Below, piece by piece: positions 31,089 through 61,093 of a stretch of DNA of 64,000 bases. The notes under the pieces are model-generated. The model worked only from the letters and a program-made list of their open reading frames with translations. It searched no databases and was not told where the DNA came from. This DNA is from Hyaloraphidium curvatum SAG 235-1 (taxonomy: Eukaryota; Fungi; Monoblepharomycota). Both the position numbers and the translations under genes were made by a program. The stretch's first letter is position 1. Each line of letters begins with the position of its first letter. Location: positions 248,001 to 312,000 of the forward strand of contig JAIVFI010000001.1 in NCBI GenBank assembly GCA_025558095.1. Reading direction: 5' to 3'.

Positions 31089-33030
31089 CTAGTAGACGAC
31101 TCGTGCAGGCTTCGGCACAGCGGAAGCCGCCGCGGCCGCCATCGAGGGCACGTACTCGGCGCTCGACGACACCGCCCCCCTCCGTCTCGCATCCCCTGCC
31201 AACGCCCTCGCCTGGGCCAGGTCCATCTCCAAGCTCCTTCTGTCGATCCTGTCTCGCTCCGTCCGTCCCGTCGAAACCTCGACAACCACCTCCTCGTCCG
31301 CCTTGCCGTCCCCGTCCAGGTCCACGAGCATCTTCTTGAGCGCCCTCTCGCCGGGCACGGTGATCTTCAGCGCGCGGAACGCCGAGTCCGTCGTCCGCAG
31401 GACGAAGTCGTGGAGCCAGCGCTTGAACGAGCCCGGCTCGCCGATGTCGGCGCTGCCGGCGAGGTATTCGCCGAACTCGTCGAGCTTCTCGGCGCCGTAT
31501 GCCGACTTTTCGAGCTGCAACCGCATCTCGTAGCGCTTCCACACGTAGTAGGCGAGCAGCCAAAGGTTGATCACGAGCAGCAGGAACATGAGGATCCCGC
31601 ACAGCACCCATAACCACGGGAACGAGCCGGCGGGCAGCTGGACGAGCATGGCGACGTTGAAGAGCGCCCAGAAGGGCAGGACAGCCCGGCGGCAGAAGAA
31701 GTCGAGCTCGGTGGCTGTCGGATGGTTTGGATCGTCAGCGAATGAGCGTGAGAAGGCACATGAGGGGACCGACCAAGGATGTGGTTGCTCTCGCGCTTGA
31801 CGAAATGGTGGATCAAGGCGATCTCGAAGAGGGAAAAGAAACTGACGAGAAATGCGACGAACACGTACCTGTTTGCGGCAGGTTAGCAGGATCCACTTTG
31901 TGCAGACGCCAATGAACTCACCAGTCCATCAATGTCGCGTAGTTCACCATCGGTAGCCCCTGGGTGACGGAGCTGTAGAACGACACTGTCCCGGCACGCG
32001 AATCAGCGCAGATTGGGCCGCACGCGTCGCCTGACCCACCGATCGTGAGCACGAGCGTGATGCTCAGACCGAGGCGCTCTGGCACCGCATCCACGGAGAA
32101 CCAGTAGCTGACGGTCGTCAGGGCGACGAGGATCATCAAAGGCAGGAAAGTTTTGATATACGCGCTCCCGGTCTTCCTCGCGACCACGAGATTGAAGATT
32201 AGGGCTTCGTGCGGCGGCCTGTCCGCAAACGGCTGGTACGTGGTCCGGGAGGTCGAGAAGCTCTCGTACGTCCAGGCCACCTGGGTGAACTGCTCGCCCG
32301 AAATGGGCGGATAGACTGGATCTGTGTCCCATTCCAGCGAGACCTGCCGCGAGTTGAACGAATACGAGGCGACTTTGATCATCAACGTCTGGCGGTCGAA
32401 AGGGAAGTTCGCGAGGTTGTACACGCTCGTCATTTGCGCCAGGAAATGGCGCGCCCAAAACACGCCGCCGACGTAGGGCTGGACCTTCACGATGTCGTCG
32501 AGCGGCTCGACGACGACCTCATTAGCAAAGTAAACGTCCGGCGTCCAGACCGAGTGCGAGGGCCCGATGCCGTTGCCCATGCCCTGCGACCCCAGGAAAC
32601 GGTAGTCCGACCCGTTTGTGGCCGGAAACTCTGCAGGCGAGACGACGAGACGCGGGTCTGTCCATCTGAGCTTGATGGAGATGTCCACGGTGAAGGTACT
32701 CGACACGGGCTCGACCGCGTAGAGGTTGTTGATATCCAGCTGGACGACGAGGCGGTCGGGCGGTCCGCCGAACGATGGGCGCGTGGACGCATCGTACGAC
32801 GACCCGGGCCCGATGAGCACGTTCTGCAGCTGCGCCGTGGCATTCAGCGGCGAGTACCCGCGTGCTTCGAAGTCCGAGTCGGCTTCGCGTTCAACGAGGA
32901 GCCGCAAGCCTCTCCGCGGCGCGCCGTCCCCGCGCCGGGCGCCCGCTTGCCGCGGTCCGTCGGGAAAGCAAGCCGCGAGCGGCCAGAAGGCCGCCGCCCC
33001 GAGCAGCAGCGCTCCAACGCGGGCCCACAT
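31089..33030 (-). CDS. Pentameric ligand-gated ion channel subunit A (Cys-less Pro-loop), spliced
   Basis: Signal peptide; WTDPRL, WTPDVYFANE, YNLANFPFDRQ; M1 YIKTFLPLMILVALTTVSYW; M2 PERLGLSITLVLT; M2-M3 LPMVNYATLMDW; M4 LDFFCRRAVLP. Confidence 0.92.
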
Positions 33031-33338
33031 TTGCTATGTCCGTCGGTTTTGCGAAGCTCATCGGGCTTCCCGATGCCATCGGGGCTCCACCGGTGCCCTT
33101 GCGCAGGGCGTGCAGCCCGAAGATCGCCCGTGGATCGCGCTCAAGGAATCCCGCGCTAGGCCAGCGACATCTGGTCAATCCTGGACGAAAACACGTCGCC
33201 ATGGGCTCCAAGCTAAGTTTCCTTGGATTTCGGGCGGTATCGAGCAGGATGCCAAGCAGTTCGACGCAACCCGAACAAGGGACTTAATGACCGACAACGC
33301 GGGGCCACCAGCCGAGCCCCGGCTCGCGCAGCGGCAGC

Positions 33339-35293
33339 ATGAGGCCCCATGCCGTCCTGGTGGCCGCCGCGGCCTGCGTCGCGGCGGCATGGCCTTTCGC
33401 TGCGGCCTTTCCAGATAAACCCTCTTCGCGAATCGGGGCGCCCAAACCCAGCCGGCGAGACCGCCGGCTGCTCCTCCCGCGAGCTTTCTCTGATACCAAC
33501 GCCACGCTGGAACTGATTGACGTCCTGACGGGACCGGGGTCCGGGTACGATGCCTGTGGGTCCCGCGAACCGCCGTCCGGGACGATCCTCACCCGCCTCC
33601 GCCTCTGCCCCCAGCGACACGCCCGTCGTTCGGCGGCCCCCCCGACCTCATCTGGGTCCGCTTCGACATCAACAACCTCTACGCCGTGGACCCGCTCACG
33701 AGCACGTTCACCGTGGACGCTTCCGTACTGCTCTGGTGGACCGACCCGCGGCTCGTCGCGCCGCCGGGCGAGTTCCCGCCCACCAACGGGAGCGAGTACC
33801 GCTTTCTGGGGTACCAGGACCTGGGGCAGGGCATCGGGCCGTCGCACCTCGTGTGGACGCCGGACATTTACTTCGTGAACGAGGTCGTCGTCGAGCCTTT
33901 GGACGACATCATCAAAGTGCAGCCGGACACGGGCCGCGTATTCTGGTCGCGGCACATGCTCGCCGACGTGACGACCAAGTACGACTTGGCGGCGTTCCCC
34001 TTCGACAGGCAGAACCTGACGATGGAGCTGGCCTCGTATTCGTACAACGAGCGGCAAATCCTGCTGGAATGGGACCCCGTGCCCGTATACCCCCCGATCC
34101 ACCCGGACACCTTCACCCAAGTGGCGTGGGACTACGTCTCGTTCACGACCGGGGAGAAAGAGTACATCCCTTTCCGCGACCAACCCCCGCACCAGATGCT
34201 CGTGTTCGGGATGCTCGTCTCCCGCAAGACGGGATCCTACTACATCAAGAGCTTTGTCCCTCTGATGGTTCTCGTCGCCCTGACCACGGTCAGCTACTGG
34301 TTCTCCGTCGACGCGGTGCCGGAGCGATTGGGCCTGAGCATCACGCTCGTGCTCACCATCGGTGCGTCGAGCGCTCCATGCAGGCCGACCCGAGCTGACT
34401 GCCCCGCAAACAGTTTCTTTCTACAGCTCCGTCACGCAGGGCCTCCCGCTGGTCAACTACGCGACCACGATGGACTGGTGGGTCCGACATGTGTGCTTGC
34501 GGTTCGATTGCAGCTCATTGCGCGTCCCGCGCGCCCCGGCAGGTACGTCTTCGTCGCGTTCATCGTCTCCTTCTTCTCCCTCTTCGAGATCGCCCTCATC
34601 CACCACTTCATCAAGCGCGAGAGCAACCACATCCTCGGTCGGTCCCCTCGCGTACCTCCACGCGGACGACCGGCGTGCTCACACACCAGCCTGGCAGCCA
34701 CCGAGCTCGACTTCTTCTGCCGCCGCACGGTCCTCCCCTTCTGGGCCTTTTTCAACGTCGCCATCCTCGTGCAGCTCCCCCCCGGCTCCTTCCCCTGGTT
34801 GTGGTTGGCGTTCGGCATCGTGGTGCCCTTATGGCTGCTGCTGAACCTTTGGCTTCTCGCCTACTACGTGTGGAAGCGGTCGGACATGCGGGAGCAGCTC
34901 GAAAGGTCGGTCTACGGCCGCGAGCACCTCGAGGACTTTGGCGAGTACCTCGCCGGCAGCGCCGACATTGGCGAGCCGGGGACGTTCAGGCGCCGGGTGC
35001 ACGACACAGTGATCCGCACGACCGACGGGGTGTTCAGGGCGCTGGGGATCCGGGTGCCGGGGGAGAAGGCGCTGAAGAAGATCCTGGTGGACTTGGACGG
35101 GGACGGCAAGCCGGAGGAGGTGGTGGTGGAGGAGGCCGGACCGTCGACGGAAAGGGAGCGGATCGACAGGCGGAGCATGGAGCTGGACCTCGCCAAGGCG
35201 AGGGCGTTGACGGGAGATGCGAGGAGGAGGGGGACGGGGGACAAGCCGGACAGATCGGCGGACGGGACGGGCGAGGGGGGCGGGTTCTGGTAG
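33339..35293 (+). CDS. Pentameric ligand-gated ion channel subunit B (paralog of A), spliced; first intron 33556-33614
   Basis: Same motifs: WTPDIYFVNE, YDLAAFPFDRQ, PERLGLSITLVLT, LPLVNYATTMDW. Three further short introns lie near 34362, 34478 and 34638. Confidence 0.92.
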
Positions 35294-37481: not shown

Positions 37482-39750
37482 TCACCCAAACAGCGCCCTC
37501 CGCGCCTCGCTCAGCGCCGCCCGCACGCCCTTCTCCGAGCAGTCCCTCCTGAACCTGGTCAGCGCGGCCCTTACCGCCGCCACCGCGCCCTCCCCCCCCT
37601 CCGCCTCCGGCTTCCCGATCCCCAGCGCCTCGTCCACCTCGTCCTGCGCGATCGGGTGATAGCTCCCCCTCGTGCGCCCGTACGTCTCGCGCGCGAGCTT
37701 CTCGCCCTCCGGGGAGGCGGCGCGCAGCGCGGCAAACACGGGGGCGACGTAGGCGATGCGCCCGTGCGAGGCGAGGAAGTCGAGCGCCTCGGGGTAGGCG
37801 CGGCGGAGGTCGGACTTGAGGGCCAGGCGCAGCCAGCGGTACCGGATCTCGGCGTTGCGGACCGCCGTGAAGTTGTCTGAACGCGGGGGAAGGAAGCAGC
37901 AAGGAAACAACGGTCAGCACCTCGGCATCAGCCGAACCGCCGCGGGGTGCCACCCACAAAGCGCATCCATCTCCTCGAGCACCTCGGCCGGCAGCGGCTC
38001 GTCGCGGGCCAGCAGCGAGTCCAGGAAGCGCATCTTCTGCGCCGGCGTCATCCCCTGGACGTCGTTGCCCGCGAACGCCTGCGCCGACACCTCCTGCTTG
38101 CCGTCGGCCTTGGCCAGCCAACGCGCCGCGAGCCCGTCGGCCTGCTCCGCGAGGGTGCGGTCGAACTCGTTGCGGTCCGGGCCGACGCCGACGCCGTACA
38201 ACCACGCCTGCCAGTCGATGGCGTCGAGCTTGGCGATGGTCTCGGGGCCGCCGCCGACGTGCGAGGGGTCCGAGAACCACTCGTAGAGGAAGGCCTTCCA
38301 GTCCTTGTTGGTGATCGATTTGCCTGCAAGTGCCTGTCAGCGGACGGACGACTGGCCCGCGCACAGGGGCCACCCACCGGAAAAGTGCTGGATGTGCGCC
38401 TTCATGTACGGGTCGAACGCCTCGGGCCCGCCGACCTTGGTCTCGATCAGGTACAGGAAGTTGTACGCCTTCTCGTACGGGATCGAGCTGAACGCGTCGT
38501 CCGGATTCCGGTTGGCCAGGTCCGCCTCGAGCGCCGTGAACGGGTTCTCGGCGCCCAGGTCCTCAACCGTGCGCTCGAGGTCCTCCTGGCCCAGCAGCGC
38601 CGACAGCTGCTGCGCGGGTTTGCCGTACCGCGCGCCGACGATCTTGCGCTCCATCATCATGGTGAAGCCCTCGTTGAGCCAGAAGGAGGGCCAGTCGAAG
38701 TTGGTCACGAGGTTGCCGGTCCAGCTGTGCGCGATCTCGTGGGCGACGACGTCGACGAGGGAGCGGTCGCCGGCGACGAGGGCGGGGGTGACGAAGGTGA
38801 GGCACGGGTTCTCCATGCCGCCGTAGGGGAACGAGGTGGGGAGGACGAGCATGTCGTAGCGGCCCCAGACGTAGGGGCCGCCAAGCCCCTCGGCTATCTT
38901 GAGGAACTGCACGATGGCGTCGAGGTGAGACTCTGTAATGCAGTAGCCGAGCAATGCAGCCCACCTCCTCGGTCTCGGCGAACTCATAGGCGACCTTGGA
39001 CAGGAACTCGGGCTCGGTCCACACCCTGCACCTCGGGGAGAGGTCCGCCGAGGCGAGGTGCCCCACGGCCAGCGCGAGGAGGTACGACGGGATCGGGATA
39101 GCCTGCTTCCACTTGGACACCGCCTTGCCATCCTCCGTGGCCACCTCGCCCTCCTGGACGGCCGACATGAGCGCCACCAGGCCCTCGGGCACCCGCACCG
39201 CGGCGTCGTAGGTCGACTTGACGCTGGGCGTGTCCATGCAGGGCACCAGCGCCCGGGCAAAGATGGGCTGGCACTGCGTGAAGAGGTAGGGGTGCTTCTT
39301 GCCCACGGTGAGCTCGGGGCCGAGCCAGCCCGCGGCGGCGCATTCGGGGCGGGTCGCGTAGTCGATCCTCAGCTCGGCCGTGGCGTCCTTGTCGAGGGGC
39401 CCCGGGAGCCGGATTTCGAGACGCTGGCCAAAGGCAAAGTGCTCCGGGTGCAGGGTGTGTTTGGCCGGAACGAGCTTGCCGCCTTCGACGAAGCGCACGG
39501 CCGAGATGTCGAGCTCCCGGGCGTCGAGGACCACCTGCTCGACGCCGTCCTTGAGGGCGCGAAGGCGGTGCACGACGTGGCCGGAGATGGTTTGGGCGTC
39601 GAAATCGATGGTCCAGTCGAGCGAGTAGTGCTCCGAGACGATTTCGTTGGCGTTCGCGTAGCTAGAAACTTCGACCGGGTGCCACTCGGCCTGGTCGACG
39701 TGGTCGGGCCCAGCGGCGTCGGCCGCGGGGGTTTTGGGGGGAACGGCCAT
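37482..39750 (-). CDS. LTA4H: Leukotriene A4 hydrolase-like M1 aminopeptidase, spliced
   Basis: PYLFTQCQ, IPSYL, SFPYGGMENP, VAHEIAHSWTGNLVTN, WLNEG, PYEK, NAEIRYRW. Confidence 0.95.
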
Positions 39751-42872: not shown

Positions 42873-43801
42873 TCACTGGGGATCGATCTCGCCGATGCAG
42901 AACCCGTGCTTGCCCGAGGGCACCCTGTACTCCATGTTGCACTCGATCTCCCTCACCCACCCCTCCTTCTTTGCCCCGTCCCACGCCTTCTGCACCCCCT
43001 TGGACCAGTCCCCGTACCCTTGCAGGTCGTCCATCAGGAGGAAGTTCCTCCGCGCGGCGAGTCTGCGCATGTTCTTCAGGTCCGCCGACGCCGCGGCCTC
43101 GTCGTGCCCACCGTCGACGATCACCACGTCGCACCGCACCTCCGGGTGTGCGGCGGCGAACTCCGGCACCGTCCGCCGCGAGTCGCCGTCGTGCACCTCC
43201 ACCCGGCCGGGGAACAGCTCCTTCAGCGTCGCCCGCGCGGCGGGGCCGTAATCTTTATGTGGGAGGTCGAAAGCGATGTACCGCGATATGGGCGGGTGCG
43301 CCGACAGGAAGGCAGTGGCGGAATGGCCGCCTGTCCGCCGCGGGACGCGTCAGCCGGGACTGGCGAGGGCCGCGGAGCGGGATGGGGCCCACCGTTGAAC
43401 CCCGTCTCGCACACCGTCCTGATCCACGGGTTCTGCGACACCAGCTGCACGTAAAAGGCCGTCTGCGCGGGGAACCAGCCCGTGTGGCCCTCCATCTTCT
43501 TGATCAGCTCGTCCTGCGCGACGCCGAGGGCCGCGGCGAGCGCGGCGTTGAGCCGCGAGACGGCCGAGGGGTACATCGGCACGCGTTTTTCGACGGCGTC
43601 GGGCGGTGCGACGGCAGGCCGGGGCGCGGGAGAGGGCGGGGCGGAGGTGTCCCCGGAAAGGTCCAGAGAGACCGCCCCGTTGCCAGGCACGGCGGGCGCG
43701 GTCCCCGGCTGCCAGAGCGACGCGCTCAGGAAAACGATAAAGACGCCCGCAACCCCCGCAAAAAGCAGGTTCTGCCGCCGGGCAGCAAGCGGCGTGGACA
43801 T
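42873..43801 (-). CDS. Membrane-anchored class I SAM-dependent methyltransferase (Methyltransf_24-like), one intron
   Basis: N-terminal signal anchor LLFAGVAGVFIVFLSASLW; VCETGFNG|GHSA; GDS; VIVDGGH; MDD. Confidence 0.85.
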
Positions 43802-43890
43802 GCTGGGGATGTTTATTCGCGCCCACTGCGTCCCTGACACATCCCCTCGCGTACCCTTCGGTTCCCAGCAACCGCATGGCACGATGGAGG

Positions 43891-44908
43891 ATGATCCCCG
43901 CCGCGACCGCGTTGTTTTTCCTCTTGGGCGCGGGGACGCGGTTGTCGGCGCCCTCCTCTCCCCCCGGCACCGACAAGCGCGAGCTGGAGACGCAGCTGGA
44001 GGAAGCAGCCGCGTCGAACCCTTTCCTCCGCTGTGCCCTCGGGATTTTCAATCGCCGGCCGTGGGACGGGGTGTTTGTCCCCCTGTTCCCGGAAGAGGAC
44101 CGGCCAGAGAGTTCCCCTTGGCCGGAGGCCATCTACCTGATCCAATACTCCCCGCTGAAGCAGCGGCGGGACTATCTGCGGACGCTGCTGGCCGGGATGC
44201 GGCCGTCCCTGAAGCTGGTCGTCGGGTTCGACAGGGAGGCCCTGTCGCCCGAAGACCAGGCGTGCCTCCCCCCGGGGCCGAACGCGGACGATCCCCGGAC
44301 GAAGGAGATTCCTCCCCGGCGGACGTGGATGCAGCTCGCACCGGGGGAAGTCTCCCTCGGCGCCAAGCACTACGCCGTCTACCTCGACGTCTTGCGGCGG
44401 GGGCTGCAGAACGCCCTCGTGCTCGAAGACGACGTGGCGCTCGACCCGGAGCTGGCGGCGCTGGAGCCCGCCGTGGACTTTGCTGCCGCTTTGGCCGCCG
44501 TATCGAGCGCCGCGGCGCAGCTCCCGGAGAACTACTCCGTCTTCGCCCCCGGGTCGTGCTACGAGTTCCACGGCGCCGGGCCGCGAACCGCTGCGCGTGC
44601 CCCTGGCAAGGGCGCTCGCGCAGCTCAACGCCTCCCTAACCCACCCCCGCGTTTTCCCGGCGCACAGATCGCGGTGCACCCACGCGTACGCCGTCTCGGC
44701 TTTGGGCGCGGCGCGGATGCTGCAACGGCTGCCGATGTCGTGCGCGGTGGATTGGATGATGAACGACGAGACGCGACCGTACAACGTCGCGATCGGAAAC
44801 GGGCGCGGGCCGGGGGTATGGTGGATGGAGCCGCCGGTTTTCGCGCAGGCGGACGACGCGGCGCTGGGGCGGAGCGCGATACGGGCGGGGACGGAGAAGG
44901 GCGACTAG
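43891..44908 (+). CDS. Glycosyltransferase family 25-like, with an apparent frameshift near 44560-44600
   Basis: Hydrophobic N-terminus, GEVSLGAKH and ALVLEDDV lie in one frame; SRCTHAYAVSALGAARML…VDW lies in another frame ending at TAG 44908. Confidence 0.75.
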
Positions 44909-45493
44909 CGGGGACGGGGGATTCGATGGGGGAGGGGGCTGCTAAGATCCGGCACTACCAGCGCCACTACCTGATCGGGACCAACACTCCGACCTCTCTC
45001 GTTCCCGCAGTGATGGAATCTCCAGGGACGTTCCATCCCGAGTTCGAGCGGCTTCTTCAACAGCTCTCTCTCCTCGCCTTCCCCCGCGGCCCTGACCCTG
45101 ACGGCCCCGGGGATGACATCGATGGGCTGAGGGCCCTCTTCATGACTTCCGCACGCCAGCGGCTTACGGCGGCCCTGGTGCGCGGCACAGAACCCATATT
45201 CCGACGCCGGGTCAATCTTTGCGTTCGCGGCAACGGCGGCGGCTCTGCTGGAGGTTCTTCGGACGGTCAGGATTCAGGATCGGGGTCGCTGCAGGGGGCG
45301 TCCACGGCGGCTGGGAGGGCGGCCGGTGAGGTAAGTCGTCGGGTGGAGGGCACGGCTCAGTGGCTCTACGAGATGGAAAGGTAAATTTCGGGGGGCAGGG
45401 CTTCGCTTTTCGTGTATAAGGACCGCCCGCGCAAATGGACCCGTTGATATTGTTTGTGCGTCACACTGATTCGACGGTGTCCCCGCCCGAGCG

Positions 45494-46642
45494 ATGCACC
45501 TCGAGCGCGCGTGGCCCGCGCTGGCGGCCGGCGTGCTGATCTCGCTGGCGGCGGTTCTCGCGTGCTTCAGCGCCGCGGGCGGCGACGTGGGCTGGCGGCC
45601 CGCGCCCGCAGGCCCGCCATCGCCGTCACCGCGCTCCGCGGACGACATCGTCCCCCGGGCGGACGGCGCCGCGCTGCTCGCGGCCTTCAGGGAGCGCGCA
45701 CGGCGGCTGGACCTGCCCTTAAATGCCCCGCCGAGCCCGGCGTGGTGGGAGCGCGCCGCGGCCCACGACGGATCCCCAAAGTGCGACTTTGCCCCCGGCG
45801 CTGGCGACGCGCACGAGTGGCAGGCAATGCGGAGGGACGCCGGCGGGGGACAATCGCCCGACGTGTTCGACGTGGCGATGTTCAACAGCGAGATGGACGT
45901 GCTGGAGGTGCGCGTCAGGGAGCTGCACCCCGTCGTGAAGCGCTTCGTGCTCCTCGACTGCCGGGTGACCTTCACCGGCCGCCCGAAGCCCGCCGGAGAG
46001 GTCGCCCCGCCCGGCTTCTTCGCCAACGATCCGCGGTTCGCCCCCTTCGCCGCCAAAATCCTGCACCTCGTCGTCGACGCCTTCCCGGACACGGTGGAAA
46101 ACATCACCTGGAAGAGGGAGGGCTACCTCCGCCGGGAGGCCCTGCGGCGCGCCGTGGAGCACCTGAAGCCGCTGCCGGGGGACCTCTTCGTCACCGCGGA
46201 CCTGGACGAGATACCCAGGGGGTCGGCGCTGAACCGCCTCCGCCGCTGCCCGGGGTGGGCTTCCCCCGCAATGCTTACGGCCGTGGGCGGATACTACTCC
46301 TACGACGTGGAGGGCGACGAGTGGCCGTACCCGCACGTGTGGCGCTACATGCCCGGGATCCCTGTTCCCGACCCGGGCATGCTGCGCGGGGGGCGACCCC
46401 CCTCCCCCACGCGGATCCGGATGGCCGCGTGGCACTGCTCGTGGTGCTTGGGCCGCGTCGAGGAGTTCCTCAGGAAGATGGGGGACTACTCCCACACGGA
46501 GCTCGACACGCCGCGGGCGCGGGGCGTGCGCAGGCTGCTGCACTCGGTGCTCACGCGGACGGACATATACGACCGCGCGGTGGTGAAATTCAGGACGTCG
46601 AGGGTGAGGACGGGGCCGGGGGACATGATCTGCCTCCGCTAA
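45494..46642 (+). CDS. Glycosyltransferase family 17 (MGAT3/GnT-III-like), intronless
   Basis: Signal anchor; FNSEMDVLEVRVREL…VKRFVL…TFTGRPKP, ADLDEIP, WHCSWC, YSH. Confidence 0.9.
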   Translation: MHLERAWPALAAGVLISLAAVLACFSAAGGDVGWRPAPAGPPSPSPRSADDIVPRADGAALLAAFRERARRLDLPLNAPPSPAWWERAAAHDGSPKCDFAPGAGDAHEWQAMRRDAGGGQSPDVFDVAMFNSEMDVLEVRVRELHPVVKRFVLLDCRVTFTGRPKPAGEVAPPGFFANDPRFAPFAAKILHLVVDAFPDTVENITWKREGYLRREALRRAVEHLKPLPGDLFVTADLDEIPRGSALNRLRRCPGWASPAMLTAVGGYYSYDVEGDEWPYPHVWRYMPGIPVPDPGMLRGGRPPSPTRIRMAAWHCSWCLGRVEEFLRKMGDYSHTELDTPRARGVRRLLHSVLTRTDIYDRAVVKFRTSRVRTGPGDMICLR

Positions 46643-46665
46643 ATCGCGGCGCCCGGCGGGACACG

Positions 46666-47865
46666 ATGACTGTGATCGCGGCTGCGGCCGGGCGGGCGCT
46701 GGCCCTCGCTGCTGCGGCGATGGCGGTCGCGCTCGCCGTCTTCGCCGTGGCTGTCGGCCGGCCGGGGGCGGGGACTGTGGGAGCCGGCGCCCGTGCCGCA
46801 TGCCCGCTTGCGCCGCCGGACTGCGAGCGCGTGCCGCCGTGCGCGGGCGCCGCCTTGCAATGCGGCGTCGACGTCCTCGGCGCCGCGTGGCTCGCCGGCG
46901 GCCCGCCGCCGCTTCCCTGCCAGGCGGCGGCGTGCGCGCTCCATTCGCGCGGCGGCGGCAATGTGTCGCTCAGCATCGTCGTCACGGCGTTCAGGTCGGC
47001 GCCGTTCGTCGGCCGCACCATCCGCGCCGTCGTCGCCGCCGCCGTCTCGCCCGCGTGGGAGCTGATCGTCGTGATCGACGGCAAACACGAACCCACCGAG
47101 GCCGCCGTGCTCGACGCCGTGCGCGCCGCCGCCCACCCGGGCCTGCGCCGCGCCGCAGTGCTGCTCTCCCCGACCCCCGTCTTCGAGACCGCCTCAAACA
47201 ACCTCGGCCTGCGCGCCGCACGCGGGCAGCTGGCCGTGCTGTTCCAGGACGACATCTTCATGCGCACGAAAGGCTTCGACGCCATCCTCGCGCTGCCCTT
47301 CCAGCTGTGGGACGACGTGGCGGTCGTCTCGGGCCGCTGCGCGCACGGCCTCCGCGGCGGCCACTACGTTGGCCGCTGCGGCGTCGACGTCAACCTCCCG
47401 CTCTCCATGGGCCCCGCAGACCGCGCAAAGTTCCACGTGCGCGACACGGTCAACCGCGGGCCGTACGCCCTGCGCACCGACCGCGCCCGCGAGCTTGGGT
47501 TCTTCGACGAGCTCAACTTCCACCTCGGCGACGACGACCACGACCTCGCCTGCCGCGCATACGCCACGCGCGGGTGGGTCGCCGGCTCCGTCGCGATCGA
47601 CTTCGACTCGCCGCTGGCGCTGGGCGCCACCCGCCGCCCCAAGGAGGCCGAATCCGCGGCGGACGCCGCCTGCGCGGCCGACAGGAAGGCGCGCAGGAGG
47701 CCCGGCGGGGGGTTCCTGCACCGCGTGTGCCACGGCGGCGCGATGGCGCGGGGGGCGGGGGTGAAGGTGCACGACGAGGAGAGGGACATGTGCGCTCGGC
47801 CGGCGACAGGCTGCGAGTACATCGCGAAGCCGATGCTGGACTTGCCGGATGCGGGCGGGGGATGA
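46666..47865 (+). CDS. Glycosyltransferase family 2-like, intronless
   Basis: Signal anchor after ATG 46666; SIVVTAF, ELIVVIDG, NLGLRAARG, FQDD, GFFDE, DDHDL. Confidence 0.85.
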   Translation: MTVIAAAAGRALALAAAAMAVALAVFAVAVGRPGAGTVGAGARAACPLAPPDCERVPPCAGAALQCGVDVLGAAWLAGGPPPLPCQAAACALHSRGGGNVSLSIVVTAFRSAPFVGRTIRAVVAAAVSPAWELIVVIDGKHEPTEAAVLDAVRAAAHPGLRRAAVLLSPTPVFETASNNLGLRAARGQLAVLFQDDIFMRTKGFDAILALPFQLWDDVAVVSGRCAHGLRGGHYVGRCGVDVNLPLSMGPADRAKFHVRDTVNRGPYALRTDRARELGFFDELNFHLGDDDHDLACRAYATRGWVAGSVAIDFDSPLALGATRRPKEAESAADAACAADRKARRRPGGGFLHRVCHGGAMARGAGVKVHDEERDMCARPATGCEYIAKPMLDLPDAGGG

Positions 47866-48003
47866 CGACGGGGCGGATTGGTTGTTGTGCAACCTCCTCG
47901 GGAAACATGGCTCGATACCCATCCATTGTTCCGTGCAGGTAGTACGCGAGTCGACGCGCCCTCGTCCTGCCAGGTCATGAAGACATCCCATTCCGCCCGT
48001 AGA

Positions 48004-48957
48004 TCAGATCTCCCCCTTCTTGTCCCTCAGCACGGACGAGTACTCCTTTGCGCTCCCCTGCCGCGTCACCCTGGGCTTTGTCCAGAACGTCGTCACGTTG
48101 CGCAGCCCGTACGTGATCTCCCAATCGATCGGCAGGCTGAAGGGCGGCACCGCCCCCAGCAGGCACCGCGCCGCCGCGGCGTTTATCAAATAGGTGTCTC
48201 CGTAGTGGGCTCGCCGCAGGTTATGCTTCATCAGGTTGGCCGAGTAGCCCACCGCGCCCCGCGTCGAGAGCATCTGCGGGCCGGCGCCGGCCCAGACGCT
48301 CCACGGGCCCGCGGCGTCCTCGGGCCGCATCTGGCCGAGCCAGGAATCGAGCACCCGGACGGTGTCGTTGGCGAGGAAGATGACGTCGTCCTCGAGCACC
48401 AGCGCCGCGTCCAGGTCGAGGTCCGCGACCGCCTCCCAAATGAGGATGTGCTTCAGCGCCAGGGAAAAGATGCCGGAGGTCACGTTCAGCATCGGGACAA
48501 CTTTCGAGGCCGGCCAGTCGGGATTCTCCATCCTCGACGTGAGCAGCGACCGCGAAACGTACTGCTCCGGGTCCTTGGAATGGTACGCCCGCAAAATGTC
48601 GGGCGGCAGCGCGTCTCGCGGGAAATCCGTCACGTAAAACACCGGCACGTCCATGCCCCAGCTCGCAAACGCCCCGTCGAGGTACGCCCGCCTCTCTTTG
48701 AGCGCCGGCACGTGGATCACAAAGACGGCCTGCACGCCGAAGGGAGGGCGCCTGCGGGCGCGGATCCGGCGCTCCTTGAATTCCAGGATCTGCAGGCTGA
48801 GGTTCGACCGCGGGAGCAAGGGCGGGAGCGGAGCGGAGGGGTCTTCCGGGCGGGATTCGGGGGCCGCGGGGCACCCGCACGAGTTCAGGAGGTGGTGGCC
48901 GGCGGCGAGGAGCAGCAGCGCCGCGAGCACCGTCAGGATGCGGCCGCGCGAGACCAT
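48004..48957 (-). CDS. Glycosyltransferase family 25-like, intronless
   Basis: Signal anchor; VFVIHV…ERR, SLALKHILIW, ALVLEDDV, YLINAAAARCLL, PIDW. Confidence 0.85.
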   Translation of the reverse strand: MVSRGRILTVLAALLLLAAGHHLLNSCGCPAAPESRPEDPSAPLPPLLPRSNLSLQILEFKERRIRARRRPPFGVQAVFVIHVPALKERRAYLDGAFASWGMDVPVFYVTDFPRDALPPDILRAYHSKDPEQYVSRSLLTSRMENPDWPASKVVPMLNVTSGIFSLALKHILIWEAVADLDLDAALVLEDDVIFLANDTVRVLDSWLGQMRPEDAAGPWSVWAGAGPQMLSTRGAVGYSANLMKHNLRRAHYGDTYLINAAAARCLLGAVPPFSLPIDWEITYGLRNVTTFWTKPRVTRQGSAKEYSSVLRDKKGEI

Positions 48958-50149
48958 GGCTCATCTAGACGTGCGGAATGGCATGGATAATGAGGCAGTG
49001 GCGGGGTCTAAGGAGGGGATCCCTGGTGAGGGATCGCGGTCACAAGGACTTGCGTTGGTGCTCAATCGCGGCGGGATCGTGCACGCCGGTTCAGCGTCAG
49101 ATGCCTGCCGTGCCGCAAACCACTGGGCGCCGCGTTCGAGGCGGCGGGGTTGCAAAGGACGCGTCGAGAAACGCGCATTCGCTCCCCCGGACGATACGCG
49201 CTACCGCAGCCCGGCACGGGCGATGGAACACGCGGGCCGTTCCCGGACGATCTTTGGAGCGCGGTTGCCGGAAGGCCGCGCCTTGAGACTTGGACGCGCT
49301 CAACGCCGACGCGTCGGTCCTCAGTCGCTCTCGTGACGAACCACGGCTCGAACTGTCTCGCCGGGCGCGACGGGAGCACCAGATTCTTCGCCAACATATC
49401 TGTGTCAGTGATGGCGAGAACGAGCCGGACTCTGAGGACAAGTCGTTTTCGCCTTCGCCCAGTCCTCTCGTCCTGGCTTCGCCGCCCATTCAATCCACAA
49501 CGTGCCCCGCCTCCTCGTCAACCTGCCCGCGGCGGACCTGATCAAGCACACGGTGCTTCAACTCTCCTCCCTTAGAGCCCCGGCGCCATGCTCGCGGACC
49601 CCAGAAATCGCATCGCTCACCGGCCCTTCGTCCTCGAAATCCGCCTCGGCCTTTCGACTCCCTCGGATCCGCACCATGCTCCACTTTCCCGACTTCTGCC
49701 CGCGCCTGCTGACCCTGGACCTGCTGGGCGCGCGGGACTGGAGCAATGTCCTCCTTGCCGAGCTCCGGCGGCGGAGCGGACAGGGCCCGCCGTGATACTT
49801 GGCCGCGTACACGGACCGACCGGACCGCAGGCCACGGTTTCCCTGGACGCCGATGCGGAAGGCTTATGGATCGGCGAGCCGAGGCCGCTGAGGTGCAGAT
49901 ACAGGGAGCTTCTGACTATCCGTTGGCGCCGACGGCGTCCAGGGACAATCCGATCTGCTGTTCCTGCTGGTCGTTGTCGATGACGAGGACAGATATGCGG
50001 GCCTCGAATCCCGGCGCAACCCGCGACGCAGATTGGGAAAAGAGACTCTTTCTTTGCGGACAATTGGCCAAATCCCCAACTCCGGGACCCGGATAACCGA
50101 TTGCATGAAGCGCCAAGCCACCAAGGCAGGATTCATCGGAGGACAAAGT

Positions 50150-53100
50150 TGCAGAACAAATGAAGTTCATTATGTCGATTGCAAACAAGGTCAACTGTAC
50201 AAATCGGTCTCATCTACAACCTCTTCTTTCATGCCCAGCGTTCATTTCAGTTCCAGATTCCGATCGGCCGCTCAGGCCACGACGCGCGAGGTCGTGGTCT
50301 TGGAGAGCTTGGCCTGCGCGAGCATCTTGTCCGCCGATGCGGCCGCAGCCTCGGCGTCGGCCTTGGCCTCGGCGTTGCGCTTCGAGCGCCGGGCCAGGAG
50401 CACGCCGAGGGCGACGAGGGCGGCCGCCACCACGGCAGCGACGACGGCGATGCCGGCGATGGCCCCGGGCGAGAGCGACGAAGAGGAGGTGCTGAGCACG
50501 GTGACCGAGCCGTCGCTGGAGACCTGGATGTTCTCCGGCACCCGGATCGCGACAGGCTTGGTGACCAGCTCGGCGTCCTGGATCGACGAGGCCGTCTCGA
50601 TGTTCTGCACCTCGACGTCGCGGTAGAGGAGGCGGCGGCGGCGCTGGCCGGCGAAGTTCTGCCTCTGGTCGGCGTACATCCTGATGAGCATGGTGATGGT
50701 GTACGAGAGCTGCTTGTTGCGGTCGTTGGGCAGAAGGATCATGGCGTCAAGGCTGTCGTCCACGCTGTCGAAGCCGCTCAGCTCGGACGACCGAAGCCGG
50801 ATGTTGGGCGTGAACGAGGTGCGGATGGTCCACTGCTTGCCGGAGTCGGCCGAGTCGATGTCGCTGACGAAGTTGACGTTGGTGCCGATCGTCGTGATGG
50901 TGCCAGTAGAGGCACCGGAAAGGGCAGTGGGGTCAGCCGCAGTCCACAGGCTCCAGTAGCCCGAGAGGCCGTTCGCGCCCGTGCGGGCGACGCGGTACTC
51001 TTTGATCGCCACGGCGTCGAGCTGCTTGTTGGTGGTGAAGACGCCGTTGGCCTCGACGGTCTGGCCGATCGTGCGCGAGGTCCTGCGAGGAAACCAAACG
51101 TCAGAAGCTGCTCCATGGGCCACGTCGCCGCCAAACTCACTGAAGAACGTCGAACTGGGTGGTCCACGAGATGGGGAAGTCGGTCTGCGCGCTCTTGCAG
51201 AAGTCGATGTTGCCCGTGAACTTGAAGGCGCCGAGGTTGGTCAGCTGGAGCGCATCGCGCATCGTGACGTTGCCGCATTGGAAGTTCTGGGTGCCGTTGT
51301 AGGTCGAGTTGCAGTCCAGGTAGAAGTCGAACTGGTAGGCAGTTTCCGACGAGATCGAGCACGATGCCGCGATGGAGAGCGTCGGCGTCCACGTGTACGT
51401 GAGGACACCCTCGACCCGGCACTCTTCTCCAATGCTGTCGCATGCGGTGCCCCCGCTGGTGTGGTAGCCGTCCCGGTTGTTGGTGAACAGGTTGGAGAAG
51501 ACGCCGCCGGGGTAGACGGTGTTGTCCGTCAGGTCCTTGCCGGCGTACGTGTTGCTGCCGTCGTTCACGAGGAAGTTGTTGGCGTTGGCGGCGTAGATAG
51601 GCAGCTTGGCGAAGTAGGGGAATAACGTCGTGAGCTGGTAAGAGATGTGGGCCTTGACGACGCCGGCCTCGCTCTTCTCGTACGTGACGCCGGTGACCGT
51701 GAAGTCATCCTTGTCTGCAGGGAAGGACGCGTCAGATGGTGGGAGGCAGGACCGTGGCGAGGCAACTTACACATGTCTTCGGTGCTCGAGGTAGCGTTGG
51801 TCGTGTCGTTGTACTCGCTCTGCACCTGGATGATGACGTCGTACCAGGTCGACATGGCCGCGCGGGGCATGCCGGTGACGCTGCCGTTGACGCCGACCAA
51901 GTCGTTGTCCTGCCACTGCACGTGGATGCGGCCCTTGTAGTTGCGGTAGGTGCCGTTGGTCAGGGCCGACTCGTTGGCCGAGATGGTGAAGCCGCAGTTG
52001 GCGACCCCCGAGCCGCGGAAGGTCTCCCAGGCCATGGTCCATAGGTGGTTGAAGTAGCAGGTGGAGCCGGAGCTGGCCGCAGTCAGGGAGTTCGCCGCGT
52101 CGCTGATGATCACGTTCGTGGCCGGGGTGGCGACGTTGGCGAAGCGTTCGAAGGTCTGCTTGCATTGAGCGTTCCCGCCGGAAATGAGGGCATCGGCGGC
52201 CGCGAAGGTGGTGACCGAGGGGCCGGAGAGGGCAATGTCGAGTTTCCTGGAGAAGGGGTCAGCGCCGGCCCGCGTTGCGACGCCCGCGAGGTGCCCACCT
52301 AAAGTAGCCAGTGCCGTCGCCGGGCGCCGGAGGGCCGGTCTGCACCCAGAACTCGAGGGCGTCGGTGCCCGAGTTGACGACGTAGGTGTACGAGCTCGAG
52401 TCGCCGGCGGCGACCAGGCGGGGGCCAGCGGGGATGTAGCCAGGCTGCGGGACGGAACGTCAGCGCGGCATAGAGACCGCAGGCGAAGGAGGCTCACGTC
52501 GGTGTCGTTGCCGAGGGTGGGAAGCTGCATGGTGCAAGAGAGCGCGGCCTCGGCGGGCGCCGCGAGGGCCGCGAGGGCGAAGGCCCCGGCGAGGAGCAGC
52601 CTATTGCTGCGCGAGAGCATGTTGAGGTGGTGTCGTTGCGTGGGTGATGAGGTTCTGCGGGCGGGGGCGTCGGACCTATATAGCGCGCCGGGTGCGTCCT
52701 GGATGACGACAGAGGATCGAGGGCGAAAACAGGACATGACTAACTCACCCTGACTCAACCGGGTCGCCGCCCCAGGCCGCAAAAGACCACCGGAAAACCA
52801 GCAAACACGCCACCAGAGTCCGGCAGAGTATTTGAGACCTGATGCTTGCGCATCCGCAGCGTTTTGCGCTGCCCGGGGCGTCGTCCGAATCGCCGCCCTC
52901 GAAATCCTCGATTTGCTGATGTAAGCAAGGGCGTGGCGAATTGACTCAACCCAGTGGCGCTCGTCAGCAAGGGGCCCTCCCAGTGAGAACCAGGGATCCC
53001 GAGGCGCGGGATGGCCCGGGTGCTCCGGATTATCCGCCAGCCCCTCGAGTGGGTGGGGTTGGGCGGCCTCACGCGCCAGCGCCACCGGAGGCCGGTCGCT

Positions 53101-53370
53101 CGGCGGCCGAGCATCCGAGGCAAGCTGCCGCTCGAGAACCGGGCAACGGCGAGCAAGCAAGCGTTTGCCGGTGGATGGCCGCCCCGGAGGTCCTGCCCTG
53201 AAGATGTCGTAGGCCGGACATGGGCATCCGCGCTCACGTCCCCGCGGATGGCGGGTTCAACGCCATTCCTGCACTGCCGCTCCCGCGTAGGATATTGCCG
53301 GAGTCCGGAGTCGCATGCAAAGCTACAGCTCGGATGTCAAGCGCGGGCTCCCTCGCCCACAGGCGTAGGG
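50150..53370 (+). repeat. Direct duplication, copy 1 (offset 7582 bp to copy 2)
   Basis: All ORF translations from 50272 to 52753 recur unchanged at +7582. The flanks are similar but diverged. Confidence 0.95.
50272..52620 (-). CDS. Type I membrane/cell-surface glycoprotein, copy 1 (four short introns)
   Basis: Signal peptide MLSRSNRLLLAGAFALAALAAPAEA; Cys- and Thr-rich beta-like ectodomain with many N-x-S/T sequons; RRRRLL; TM GAIAGIAVVAAVVAAALVALGVLL; short basic tail; TATA at ~52677-52682. Confidence 0.85.
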
Positions 53371-54672
53371 CCACCAACCGCCGCCAGCCTCCGCGTGTGC
53401 TCCTCCAGCGCCGCCCGCAGCCTCCCCTCCCACGCCCGCATGCCGACCGGATCCCACGGCGCCTCGACGTCTTCCTTCGCGTCCCTGTCGGTCTTGTAGT
53501 GCAGCATCTTCAGCTCCGTGTTCGGATCCAGGTACCTCGGCCGCCGCGGCGGCGAATCCACAACGTGGACCGAGTGCGTGCCGACGTCGGGTGGGCGGAA
53601 GAAGACCTTGTGGCGGCCGGCGAGGTCGAAGGCCGGGTAGCGGAAGCGGGCGGAGGTGACCAGCGGCCGCGAACTCTGCGGGTCGACGGCGGTGATGTTG
53701 ACCGATCCAGGACCGCGCGAATAGAACCAGCTGTACGCGGTAAAGTGCGTCCTCCTGCCCGGTTTCGCGGCCGCCTCGATGCGCCGGAGCAGCGCAGGCA
53801 CCATCCGCTCCCCGATGGGCAGCATGTACTCGTCCTTGTCGTGGACGGTCATCCACTCGGCCAGCGCGCCGTACCGCCGGATGCAGTGGTTGTTGGCGGT
53901 GATCTGCTGCAGGACCCACGTCCGGCCGAGCTCGGGCTGCTTTCCGAGCTCGAAGCGGGGCCATGGCACCACGGTGACCAAGCCGTCGGCCACAAAAGGG
54001 CCGAGCGCGCGGGCCAGGTCGGCCGGGAAGGCCGAGTGCGGCTCGTGGTGCGCGTAGATGAAGAAGTGCGAGTAGCCAACGAGCCGGTGGAACGAAATCC
54101 ATTCCGGCAGTCCCTCGTCGCTATTGACCATAGTGCACACCGCGAGTTCGAAGGAGGGCGGTGCTTCCGGGCCGCAGCGAGAAGGATGGGGTTCAAGCCG
54201 GTAGAATCTGGCCGGAGACGCTCCGCGGGGCACTACGCCAACTCGAACAGTTCGCCCGCTGTCCAGCAGGGTTCGTGCGCTCGTAGGTATGGGGCAACGC
54301 CGGGCGAAGATGTGCTCGCTCGCATTGAGGTACTCTGAAGGTTGGACCACGGAGCGATGCCTGCCCTCGAACACGCAGTCCAATGGTGTGCGCTTCGCAC
54401 GGGACAGCGAAACAGTGCCTCCGTCAACACCGCCCAGCAGGGTCGCGTTCTGGTGCAGGGCGTCCGCGAGAAGCGCGAAACCGGGCGGCAGTGAGACAGC
54501 CGACAAATCGACATCGACGCTCCCCGGGGTGTGCAGGCCGGCAATACGCCCGTTTGTCGCGGGGTGACGAGTCCATTGCGTCCGACAAGATGAGCTTCGA
54601 CGTTCCGGCAGTGAGTGCGGCGTAAACGAGCAGGAGCGCCGGGAACCTGGGGACCCCGAGTCCGACGGGCAT
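53337..54672 (-). CDS. Glycosyltransferase family 92 / DUF23-like; 5' signal anchor lies in a different frame
   Basis: LAVCTMV…LPEWISFHRLVGYSHFFIY, NHCIRRY, WMTVHDKDEYM, HSVH, LHY. The ATG at 54672 (MPVGLGVPRFPALLLVYAALTAG) is out of frame with the catalytic ORF. Confidence 0.8.
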
Positions 54673-57639: not shown

Positions 57640-57729
57640 GACAGCAGTGTATGTGGCGCGAAGACTTGTTCAGACCTGCACGCCTGTCCAGATGAGGCCG
57701 GACAGCGCGTACAAACGGGTGAAGCCGCC

Positions 57730-60700: not shown

Positions 60701-60962
60701 GACGATCCGACGCAAGCTGGCGCTCGAAAACCGGAACAGAGCGCAAGCACGCGTTTGTCGGTGGATGGCCGCCCGGAGGTTCCCCGCTGAAGATGTCGTA
60801 GGCGAACAGGGGCATCCACGCTCACGTCGCCAGTGGGATGGTGAGCCGAATGCCATTCCTGCACTGCCGCTCCGCACGACGCCGTGTAGGATATTGCCGG
60901 AGTCGCATGGAAATCTACAGCTCGGATGTCAAGCGCGGGCTCCCTCTCCCACAGGCGTAGGG
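57730..60962 (+). repeat. Direct duplication, copy 2, interrupted at 60962 by a retrotransposon
   Basis: Matches 50150-53370 up to …acaggcgtaggg, after which TGTCAGG begins. Confidence 0.95.
57854..60202 (-). CDS. Type I membrane/cell-surface glycoprotein, copy 2
   Basis: Translations are identical to copy 1 in every listed ORF. Confidence 0.85.
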
Positions 60963-61093
60963 TGTCAGGACGGGGCGCGGGGGACCCGTAAAGACCTGTG
61001 TTGACGACGTTGAGGAGTCACTACACAGCACTGCGCCTAGTCTTCCCTCGCCGGGGACCACCGTCCCCCTTGCCCCGACGCCGGCGCGTTACA
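60963..61093 (-). repeat. 3' LTR (131 bp, TGTAAC…CTGACA) preceded by a G-run polypurine tract
   Basis: The minus strand reads GGTT-(G-run)-TGA|TGTAACGCG…CCTGACA. Host homology resumes exactly at 60962. Confidence 0.8.

What the first reader, a model, noticed from the sequence alone, without database searches (positions are those of the whole stretch)
31089..35293. Head-to-head pair of Cys-less pentameric ligand-gated ion channel genes in a fungal-type genome
Seen: two paralogous pLGIC genes diverge from a ~310-bp spacer (ATGs at 33030 and 33339). Both keep WxPD, the FPFD Pro-loop without flanking cysteines, and M1-M4. Known: pLGICs are the animal neurotransmitter-receptor superfamily, with Cys-less relatives in prokaryotes and some protists; they are generally regarded as absent from fungi. 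Inference: a bidirectional promoter co-expresses two subunits of a heteropentameric chemosensory channel.
Basis: partly seen in the sequence, partly recalled or inferred. Interest (0 to 1): 0.82.

Follow-up and report, generated by a model that had tools for sequence, protein, structure and literature searches.

The report
Fungal nerve-receptor-type ion channel gene pair
An aquatic fungus has two intact, expressed, back-to-back genes for the five-subunit ligand-opened ion channels best known as animal neurotransmitter receptors, a family that reviews list as absent from fungi; related chytrid fungi have them too, with an extra membrane helix.

Summary
Observation confirmed. The genome is Hyaloraphidium curvatum (Monoblepharidomycota, Fungi). 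[quoted passage not shown] They are two of nine paralogues; six sit in head-to-head pairs. Such pairs recur in metagenomic relatives and, independently, in Zopfochytrium. At least seven Chytridiomycete genera have homologues in GenBank under automatic names, but no searched paper reports fungal pLGICs; 2016 and 2021 papers state absence. A shared promoter is likely. The heteropentamer is plausible but untested (about 50%): this pair joins two sister subunits, unlike the conserved type I/type II pairs. Ligand unknown; the fungus is described as non-flagellated, so zoospore chemotaxis is unlikely here. The scan noted this family on other pieces of this genome. Verdict: new variant of a known kind.

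The parts
31089..33030 (-). Gene A: Cys-less pLGIC subunit, 591 aa, 4 exons (33030-32040, 31985-31922, 31868-31774, 31714-31089)
   Evidence: Pfam E 1.3e-21; identical to NCBI H. curvatum protein P0001; three RNA splice joints; AF2 model matches glycine receptor, TM-score 0.88 over the target
33339..35293 (+). Gene B: paralogous Cys-less pLGIC subunit, 572 aa, 5 exons (33339-33555, 33615-34361, 34414-34477, 34543-34637, 34698-35293)
   Evidence: Pfam E 5.8e-19; spliced model open to stop; RNA joints for introns 1-3, loose end for intron 4; 66% (extracellular) and 86% (membrane) identical to A
33031..33338 (.). 308-nt divergent spacer holding both 5' UTRs; candidate bidirectional promoter
   Evidence: RNA contigs end at 33264 (A) and 33311 (B), 46 nt apart; contigs cannot show true starts. 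No sequence conservation with the spacers of other pairs
32383..32424 (-). Gene A Pro-loop (FPFD) with no flanking cysteines
33995..34006 (+). Gene B FPFD Pro-loop core, no flanking cysteines
32074..32082 (-). Gene A selectivity-filter triplet Pro(-2') Glu(-1') Arg(0')
   Evidence: aligned to the Pro-Ala-Arg triplet of glycine receptors
34319..34327 (+). Gene B selectivity-filter triplet Pro-Glu-Arg; M2 pore-lining positions identical to A
31536..31619 (-). Gene A extra hydrophobic helix M5 (aa 416-443), followed by basic residues
   Evidence: highest hydropathy peak 2.7; helix 416-453 with pLDDT about 94; present in 8 of 9 paralogues by alignment plus hydropathy in all, and in chytrid and choanoflagellate relatives
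34790..34873 (+). Gene B extra hydrophobic helix M5
31092..31535 (-). Gene A C-terminal tail (aa 444-591), inferred cytoplasmic, helical, with an Asp-x-Asp-Gly-Asp-Gly loop
   Evidence: conserved across type I subunits of several organisms; no Pfam match under E 0.01 (FG-GAP only E 0.29); no atlas hit; isolated fold low confidence, pLDDT 53.7
34874..35290 (+). Gene B C-terminal tail with the same Asp-x-Asp-Gly-Asp-Gly loop (35090-35113)

Best explanation
A and B encode secreted-pathway subunits of a native fungal pentameric ligand-gated ion channel. SHOWN: intact, spliced, transcribed genes of a fungus; pLGIC fold; old duplicates under purifying selection; nine-member family with repeated head-to-head pairing. 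INFERRED: (1) a shared bidirectional promoter co-expresses them (about 75%); (2) the subunits, whose pore helices are identical but whose complementary ligand faces differ, co-assemble into mixed pentamers, possibly alongside homomers (about 50%); (3) an extracellular small molecule binds between subunits and opens a cation-selective pore (Glu at -1'; about 70%), depolarising the cell or admitting Ca2+; (4) the ligand of A/B is probably not a plain amino acid such as glycine, GABA or glutamate but a less acidic or basic solute, or protons or metal, because the pocket lost the amino-acid-agonist motif and gained Asp on strand beta1 and His in loop C (about 55%); (5) M5 returns the C-terminus to the cytoplasm, where a conserved helical tail replaces the very short M3-M4 loop as the regulatory or clustering domain (topology about 85%, role about 40%). 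The family is most simply an old opisthokont Cys-less clade kept in some early fungi and lost in most (about 60%).
For: Pfam, PDB sequence and fold matches to glycine/GABA-A receptors. Both genes spliced, RNA contig ends 46 nt apart. Four-fold sites 55% identical against 41% by chance while the membrane domain is 86% identical. Six of nine paralogues lie head-to-head with 200-310-nt spacers, against one divergent pair among three close pairs in about 60 P450 loci (counted by eye, lower bound). Type I/type II head-to-head pair conserved in metagenome contig L015 and probably L018, a type I/type I pair in L014, and an independent pair in Zopfochytrium 282 nt apart. PER against PAR in most chytrids; -1' and 0' form the charge filter (PMC3590989). 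Amino-acid-agonist motif (PMC4338433) is complete in Blyttiomyces P0015, nearly complete in paralogue C37-minus, broken in A and B. Chytrid clade is sister to a protist clade holding the choanoflagellate Mylnosiga; fungal monophyly not rejected, AU p 0.108.
Against: No assembly, current or ligand data. A and B are sisters together with a singleton (C39) that has no neighbouring partner, so this subclade may work as homomers or pair in trans. L014 is syntenic with another locus (C6), so the A/B pairing itself is not shown to be conserved. Inverted duplications occur elsewhere in this window. Jaiteh et al. warn that the M2 triplet does not reliably predict selectivity outside animals. One RNA run from one study; contigs give no start sites or levels. 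In the best tree the monoblepharid and chytridiomycete genes are not sisters.
Confidence: 0.55

Rival explanations
1. A and B are independent homopentameric channels with different ligand preferences; the head-to-head layout is the trace of an old inverted duplication and gives co-regulation at most.
For: Both keep the same principal-face residues, so each could form its own site. Sister gene C39 stands alone. The pair is not orthologous to the L014 pair. Another inverted duplication lies at 15284-17415 / 23125-25223.
Against: Head-to-head pairing arose or was kept repeatedly in this family, including independently in Zopfochytrium, and lasted while synonymous sites nearly saturated; pore helices are identical.
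Confidence: 0.3
2. The channel is anion-selective or non-selective like its closest solved relatives (glycine and GABA-A receptors) and like the PAR-bearing chytrid homologues.
For: Pro at -2' and Arg at 0' are kept; best sequence and fold matches are chloride channels; triplet is an unreliable predictor outside animals.
Against: Glu at -1' (Asp in one paralogue) in all monoblepharid subunits with this region; from general knowledge, not a paper read here, an Ala-to-Glu change at -1' makes glycine receptors cation-selective.
Confidence: 0.2
3. Origin rival: the monoblepharid and chytridiomycete genes came in by one or two lateral transfers from aquatic protists rather than by descent.
For: Patchy distribution; no Gonapodya or other non-chytrid fungal hit among named proteins; the two fungal groups are not sisters in the best tree; most sister-clade sequences are unidentified.
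Against: Present in two fungal classes and at least seven Chytridiomycete genera; the one named sister sequence is a choanoflagellate; monophyly of the fungal genes is not rejected; introns and GC3 are native.
Confidence: 0.35
4. Contamination, mis-assembly or pseudogenes.
For: None found; a family unexpected for fungi invites the check.
Against: 1.6-Mb contig with an rDNA unit and ordinary eukaryotic neighbours; nine copies on four contigs; native introns and GC3; spliced RNA with no sequence differences; homologues in other fungi.
Confidence: 0.01

Closest known systems
Eukaryotic Cys-less Pro-loop receptors of protists and invertebrates (Jaiteh et al. 2016, PMC4795631)
   Same: Pro-loop without cysteines, conserved interface residues, unicellular host, no known ligand; groups with a choanoflagellate sequence (Mylnosiga) in the tree.
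   Different: Host kingdom stated there to lack pLGICs; fifth helix and C-terminal tail not mentioned in the passages read; head-to-head gene pairs not reported in what was searched.
Glycine / GABA-A / GluCl anion-selective Cys-loop receptors
   Same: Best PDB matches (E 6e-33, TM-score 0.88); N-terminal helix and Tyr-Asp...Arg-Pro motif; same M1-M2 linker length with Pro(-2') and Arg(0'); relatives keep the amino-acid-agonist motif.
   Different: About 25% identity; no disulphide; Glu instead of Ala at -1'; very short M3-M4 loop; extra M5 and tail; A and B lack the agonist motif; grouping with them rejected (AU p 0.0035).
Bacterial ELIC / GLIC-type channels
   Same: Cys-less loop, short M3-M4 loop, acidic residue at the inner mouth of the pore.
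   Different: Has the eukaryote-type N-terminal helix, introns and a glycosylation motif; falls on the eukaryotic side of the tree (100/97 against Prochlorothrix and Binataceae proteins).
Automatically annotated chytrid proteins (e.g. KAJ3331454 Blyttiomyces, KAI8896906 Globomyces, KAJ3309495 Boothiomyces, KAI9320274 Zopfochytrium, KAJ3072204 Podochytrium)
   Same: Cys-less, M5-bearing; Zopfochytrium also has a head-to-head pair.
   Different: 28-36% identity; mostly PAR filter; intact agonist motif in some; short tails; separate clade (100/98).

Membership tests
pLGIC (Pro-loop) superfamily | Extracellular beta-sandwich ligand-binding domain | tested here: met
   PF02931 over cut-off for both genes; AF2 strands and Foldseek E 1e-26 to glycine receptor
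pLGIC (Pro-loop) superfamily | Invariant Pro-loop proline in [F/Y]PxD, WxPD, pre-M1 Arg, M1 Pro, M2 0' Arg and 9' Leu | tested here: met
   W162 P164 D165, F209 P210 D212, R285, P297, R319, 9' Leu
pLGIC (Pro-loop) superfamily | Four membrane helices M1-M4 | tested here: met
   Helices 287-310, 316-338, 349-376, 381-409; a fifth helix follows
pLGIC (Pro-loop) superfamily | Pentameric assembly and ligand-gated ion flux | not testable with these tools
   No multimer prediction or electrophysiology available
Cys-loop receptors (animal type) | Cys-x13-Cys disulphide around the Pro-loop | tested here: not met
   No Cys in the mature extracellular domain of A or B; clade with Cys-loop rows rejected, AU p 0.0035
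Anion-selective glycine/GABA-A/GluCl receptors | Pro-Ala-Arg filter | tested here: not met
   Pro-Glu-Arg in A and B
Anion-selective glycine/GABA-A/GluCl receptors | Amino-acid-agonist motif: aromatics in loops A, B, C, loop C Thr, loop D Arg, loop E Ser (PMC4338433) | tested here: not met
   A: Tyr, Tyr, His, Arg, Lys, Ala; B: Tyr, Tyr, His, Gln, Leu, Ser. Loop C register is approximate
Prokaryotic ELIC/GLIC-type channels | No N-terminal helix; prokaryotic branch of the tree | tested here: not met
   Helix 64-73 predicted; eukaryotic side of tree
Eukaryotic Cys-less clade of Jaiteh et al. 2016 | Monophyly with the protist and lophotrochozoan Cys-less reference sequences | tested here: inconclusive
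   Falls in a Cys-less eukaryote group (98/94) with a choanoflagellate, but the paper's reference sequences were not in the tree
Co-regulated heteromeric subunit gene pair | Both genes transcribed from a short shared upstream region | tested here: inconclusive
   Both spliced in one run, contig ends 46 nt apart; start sites and co-regulation cannot be read from contigs

The most novel reading that the evidence does not exclude
Early-diverging fungi keep an ancient opisthokont branch of neurotransmitter-receptor-type channels with a five-helix membrane domain and a cytoplasmic C-terminal domain. They are used as heteromeric chemoreceptors whose subunit genes were paired head-to-head more than once, and the monoblepharid line switched from anion to cation selectivity and changed ligand independently of animals.
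Probability: 0.3. Interest if true: 0.9.

Novelty: new variant of a known kind. Interest (0 to 1): 0.76.

Why it matters
It overturns the cited statement that fungi lack pLGICs and supplies outgroup-side evidence for what these receptors did before synapses, a question Jaiteh et al. note has no answer for any unicellular member. The genes come from culturable fungi and can be expressed in oocytes, so ligand, selectivity and heteromer formation are directly testable. A fifth helix with an intracellular C-terminus would be a topology not found in the papers searched. The PAR (chytridiomycete) against PER (monoblepharid) contrast is a natural test of the selectivity rule.

Tried and rejected
Recent inverted duplication: rejected; introns barely align and four-fold sites are near saturation. 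Prokaryotic transfer or contamination: rejected (introns, GC3, tree). One ancient pair shared by monoblepharids and Zopfochytrium: rejected; the Zopfochytrium partner P0060 has 0 of 13 type II diagnostic residues and stays with chytrids in the membrane-domain tree. Orthology of the A/B pair to the L014 pair: not supported (tree; L014 neighbour maps to contig C6). GluCl-type loop G arginine: the arginine of chytrid and ancestral type I subunits aligns two residues before the GluCl position, so it is not the same site. Conserved promoter motif among spacers: none. Tail identity: Pfam, atlas and a separate fold gave nothing usable, so no fold search was run on that model. Literature: ten searches, none reporting fungal pLGICs or a fifth helix; two key papers on selectivity and GluCl structure were not held. 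As the operators asked, spliced genes were sent to search tools exon by exon by reference, or as the database protein P0001; the joined gene B protein was never searched and was used only in local scripts. The large representative search was run once because the claim rests on which relatives exist.

Full report
Host. The window carries a eukaryotic rDNA unit at 8170-13949. The first exon of gene A is 100% identical to an NCBI protein of Hyaloraphidium curvatum on a 1.6-Mb contig. The rDNA itself was not placed on a tree; the identification rests on this protein match. H. curvatum is a non-flagellated fungus of the Monoblepharidomycota (PMC8371127). Neighbours are ordinary: a short-chain dehydrogenase, an M1 peptidase, an MFS transporter, glycosyltransferases.

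Observation. Gene A (minus, 591 aa, four exons) equals the database protein P0001. Gene B (plus, 572 aa, five exons) is open to its stop; NCBI's model of B skips intron 3 and ends in a wrong frame. Both match PF02931 above the cut-off. The best solved relatives are glycine receptors by sequence (E 6e-33) and by fold (AF2 pLDDT 77.7; TM-score 0.88 over the target). Neither mature extracellular domain holds a cysteine. One public run shows splice joints for all three introns of A and three of B, a loose end for the fourth, and contig ends at 33264 and 33311. So both genes are transcribed. Contig depth (about 190 for A, 750 for B) cannot rank them.

After M4 comes a further strongly hydrophobic helix (aa 416-443 of A, hydropathy 2.7, pLDDT about 94) closed by basic residues, then a tail of about 150 residues. 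With the N-terminus outside, an odd fifth helix puts the tail inside (inference). The M3-M4 loop is only a few residues. The tail is conserved among type I subunits of several organisms and includes an Asp-x-Asp-Gly-Asp-Gly loop in some, but matches nothing known. The pore entrance reads Pro-Glu-Arg where glycine receptors and most chytrid homologues read Pro-Ala-Arg. Positions -1' and 0' form the charge filter (PMC3590989), which suggests cation selectivity, with the caveat of Jaiteh et al. that the rule is weak outside animals. The amino-acid-agonist motif (PMC4338433) is complete in the Blyttiomyces protein and nearly so in paralogue C37-minus. A, B and their sister C39 replace the loop C aromatic with His, the loop D Phe with Ser and the beta1 Arg with Asp; A and B also differ from each other on the complementary face (Lys/Ala against Leu/Ser).

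Family in the genome. Nine genes on four contigs: head-to-head pairs on C1 (this one), C6 (862 kb) and C37, a tandem pair on C6 (45 kb) and a singleton on C39. Start-to-start spacers are about 200-310 nt. The tree splits them into type I and type II. The C6 and C37 pairs are type I plus type II; that layout recurs in metagenome contig L015 and probably L018, whose minus-strand partner is cut off after its signal peptide. The window pair is type I plus type I: A, B and C39 form one subclade (100/100). A and B are 66% identical outside and 86% in the membrane, with four-fold sites at 55% against 41% by chance, so the duplication is old and both are under selection. Contig L014, from an organism whose nearest named relative is H. 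curvatum, has another type I/type I pair, but it is syntenic with a different locus. Zopfochytrium polystomum has a head-to-head pair 282 nt apart that arose separately. As a rough control, about 60 P450 loci give three close pairs, one divergent.

Wider distribution. The exhaustive representative search and name look-ups show Cys-less, M5-bearing homologues in Blyttiomyces, Globomyces, Boothiomyces, Terramyces, Zopfochytrium, Podochytrium and Obelidium. They form a clade (100/98) sister to mostly unidentified sequences that include the choanoflagellate Mylnosiga fluctuans (95/91). The monoblepharid clade (100/100) branches next to these at an unresolved fork. Holding all fungal genes together is not rejected (AU p 0.108); joining the monoblepharid genes to Cys-loop receptors is (p 0.0035). 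No Gonapodya or non-chytrid fungal protein appeared among named hits; many hits were not named, so absence is not shown.

Literature. Jaiteh et al. 2016 detect no pLGIC in Fungi (PMC4795631), and a 2021 review repeats this (PMC8634148). Searches for chytrid with Cys-loop, pLGIC with Chytridiomycota, Hyaloraphidium with pLGIC, and pLGIC with a fifth transmembrane helix returned nothing. The library lacks most subscription papers. The proteins are visible in GenBank under automatic Pfam-derived names, so they are annotated but apparently undiscussed.

Mechanism. Most likely a plasma-membrane, ligand-opened, cation-selective pentamer. A shared promoter co-expresses A and B, and mixed pentamers are about as likely as separate homomers. 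Repeated pairing, identical pores and differing complementary faces favour mixing; the partnerless sister C39 and the lack of a conserved A/B orthologous pair argue for caution. The ligand is unknown and probably not a simple amino acid for this subclade. Since the species is described without flagella, sensing of nutrients, pH or neighbours by vegetative cells or spores is likelier than steering of zoospores (inference).

Verdict. A real, expressed and apparently unreported fungal branch of a well-known superfamily, with a variant topology. New variant of a known kind; interest 0.76. Earlier notes of this scan flag other members in the same genome; I found those loci independently first, and the notes are not used as support. 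The joined gene B protein was not sent to any search tool.

Noticed in passing
window 8170-13949 (minus): A single assembled rDNA unit (18S, 5.8S, 28S) lies inside the contig, right next to a retroelement.
   Followed up: partly
window 24-4475 and 5579-7159 (plus); 61021-63900 (minus): Ty3/gypsy-like pol reading frames (protease, reverse transcriptase, integrase motifs seen by eye) at both ends of the window, with a possible gag at 5.6-7.1 kb.
   Followed up: no
window 50152-53370 and 57729-60962: 3.2-kb direct duplication, 97.6% identical, 7.58 kb apart, holding a multi-exon gene with no significant Pfam match in the two exons scanned.
   Followed up: partly
window 15284-17415 and 23125-25223: A second inverted duplication, about 2.1 kb and 87% identical; content not identified.
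   Followed up: no
window 37488-39705 (minus): M1 aminopeptidase, leukotriene A4 hydrolase-like by eye, 2 kb downstream of gene B.
   Followed up: partly
window 43800-48960 and 53400-54150: Cluster of membrane-anchored glycosyltransferase-like genes (GT25, GT92) and a methyltransferase-like gene.
   Followed up: no
NCBI models P0002, P0004, P0012, P0014: Four database models of these paralogues are mis-spliced (retained or missed introns near M2-M4), which hides the M5 helix and tail in some records.
   Followed up: yes
L019:3901-12301 (Zopfochytrium polystomum): Three pLGIC genes in 8.4 kb: one tandem and one head-to-head arrangement, next to a P450.
   Followed up: partly
P0016, P0019, P0027, P0030, P0033, P0039, P0044 (loci L016, L021): An unidentified eukaryote clade of M5-bearing Cys-less pLGICs has a different conserved cysteine pair (after loop A and before the Pro-loop), a possible alternative disulphide.
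   Followed up: no
L012:5091-6700 (paralogue C6b-plus): The only paralogue with Thr-Asp-Arg instead of Pro-Glu-Arg at the filter and the longest branch of the family.
   Followed up: no
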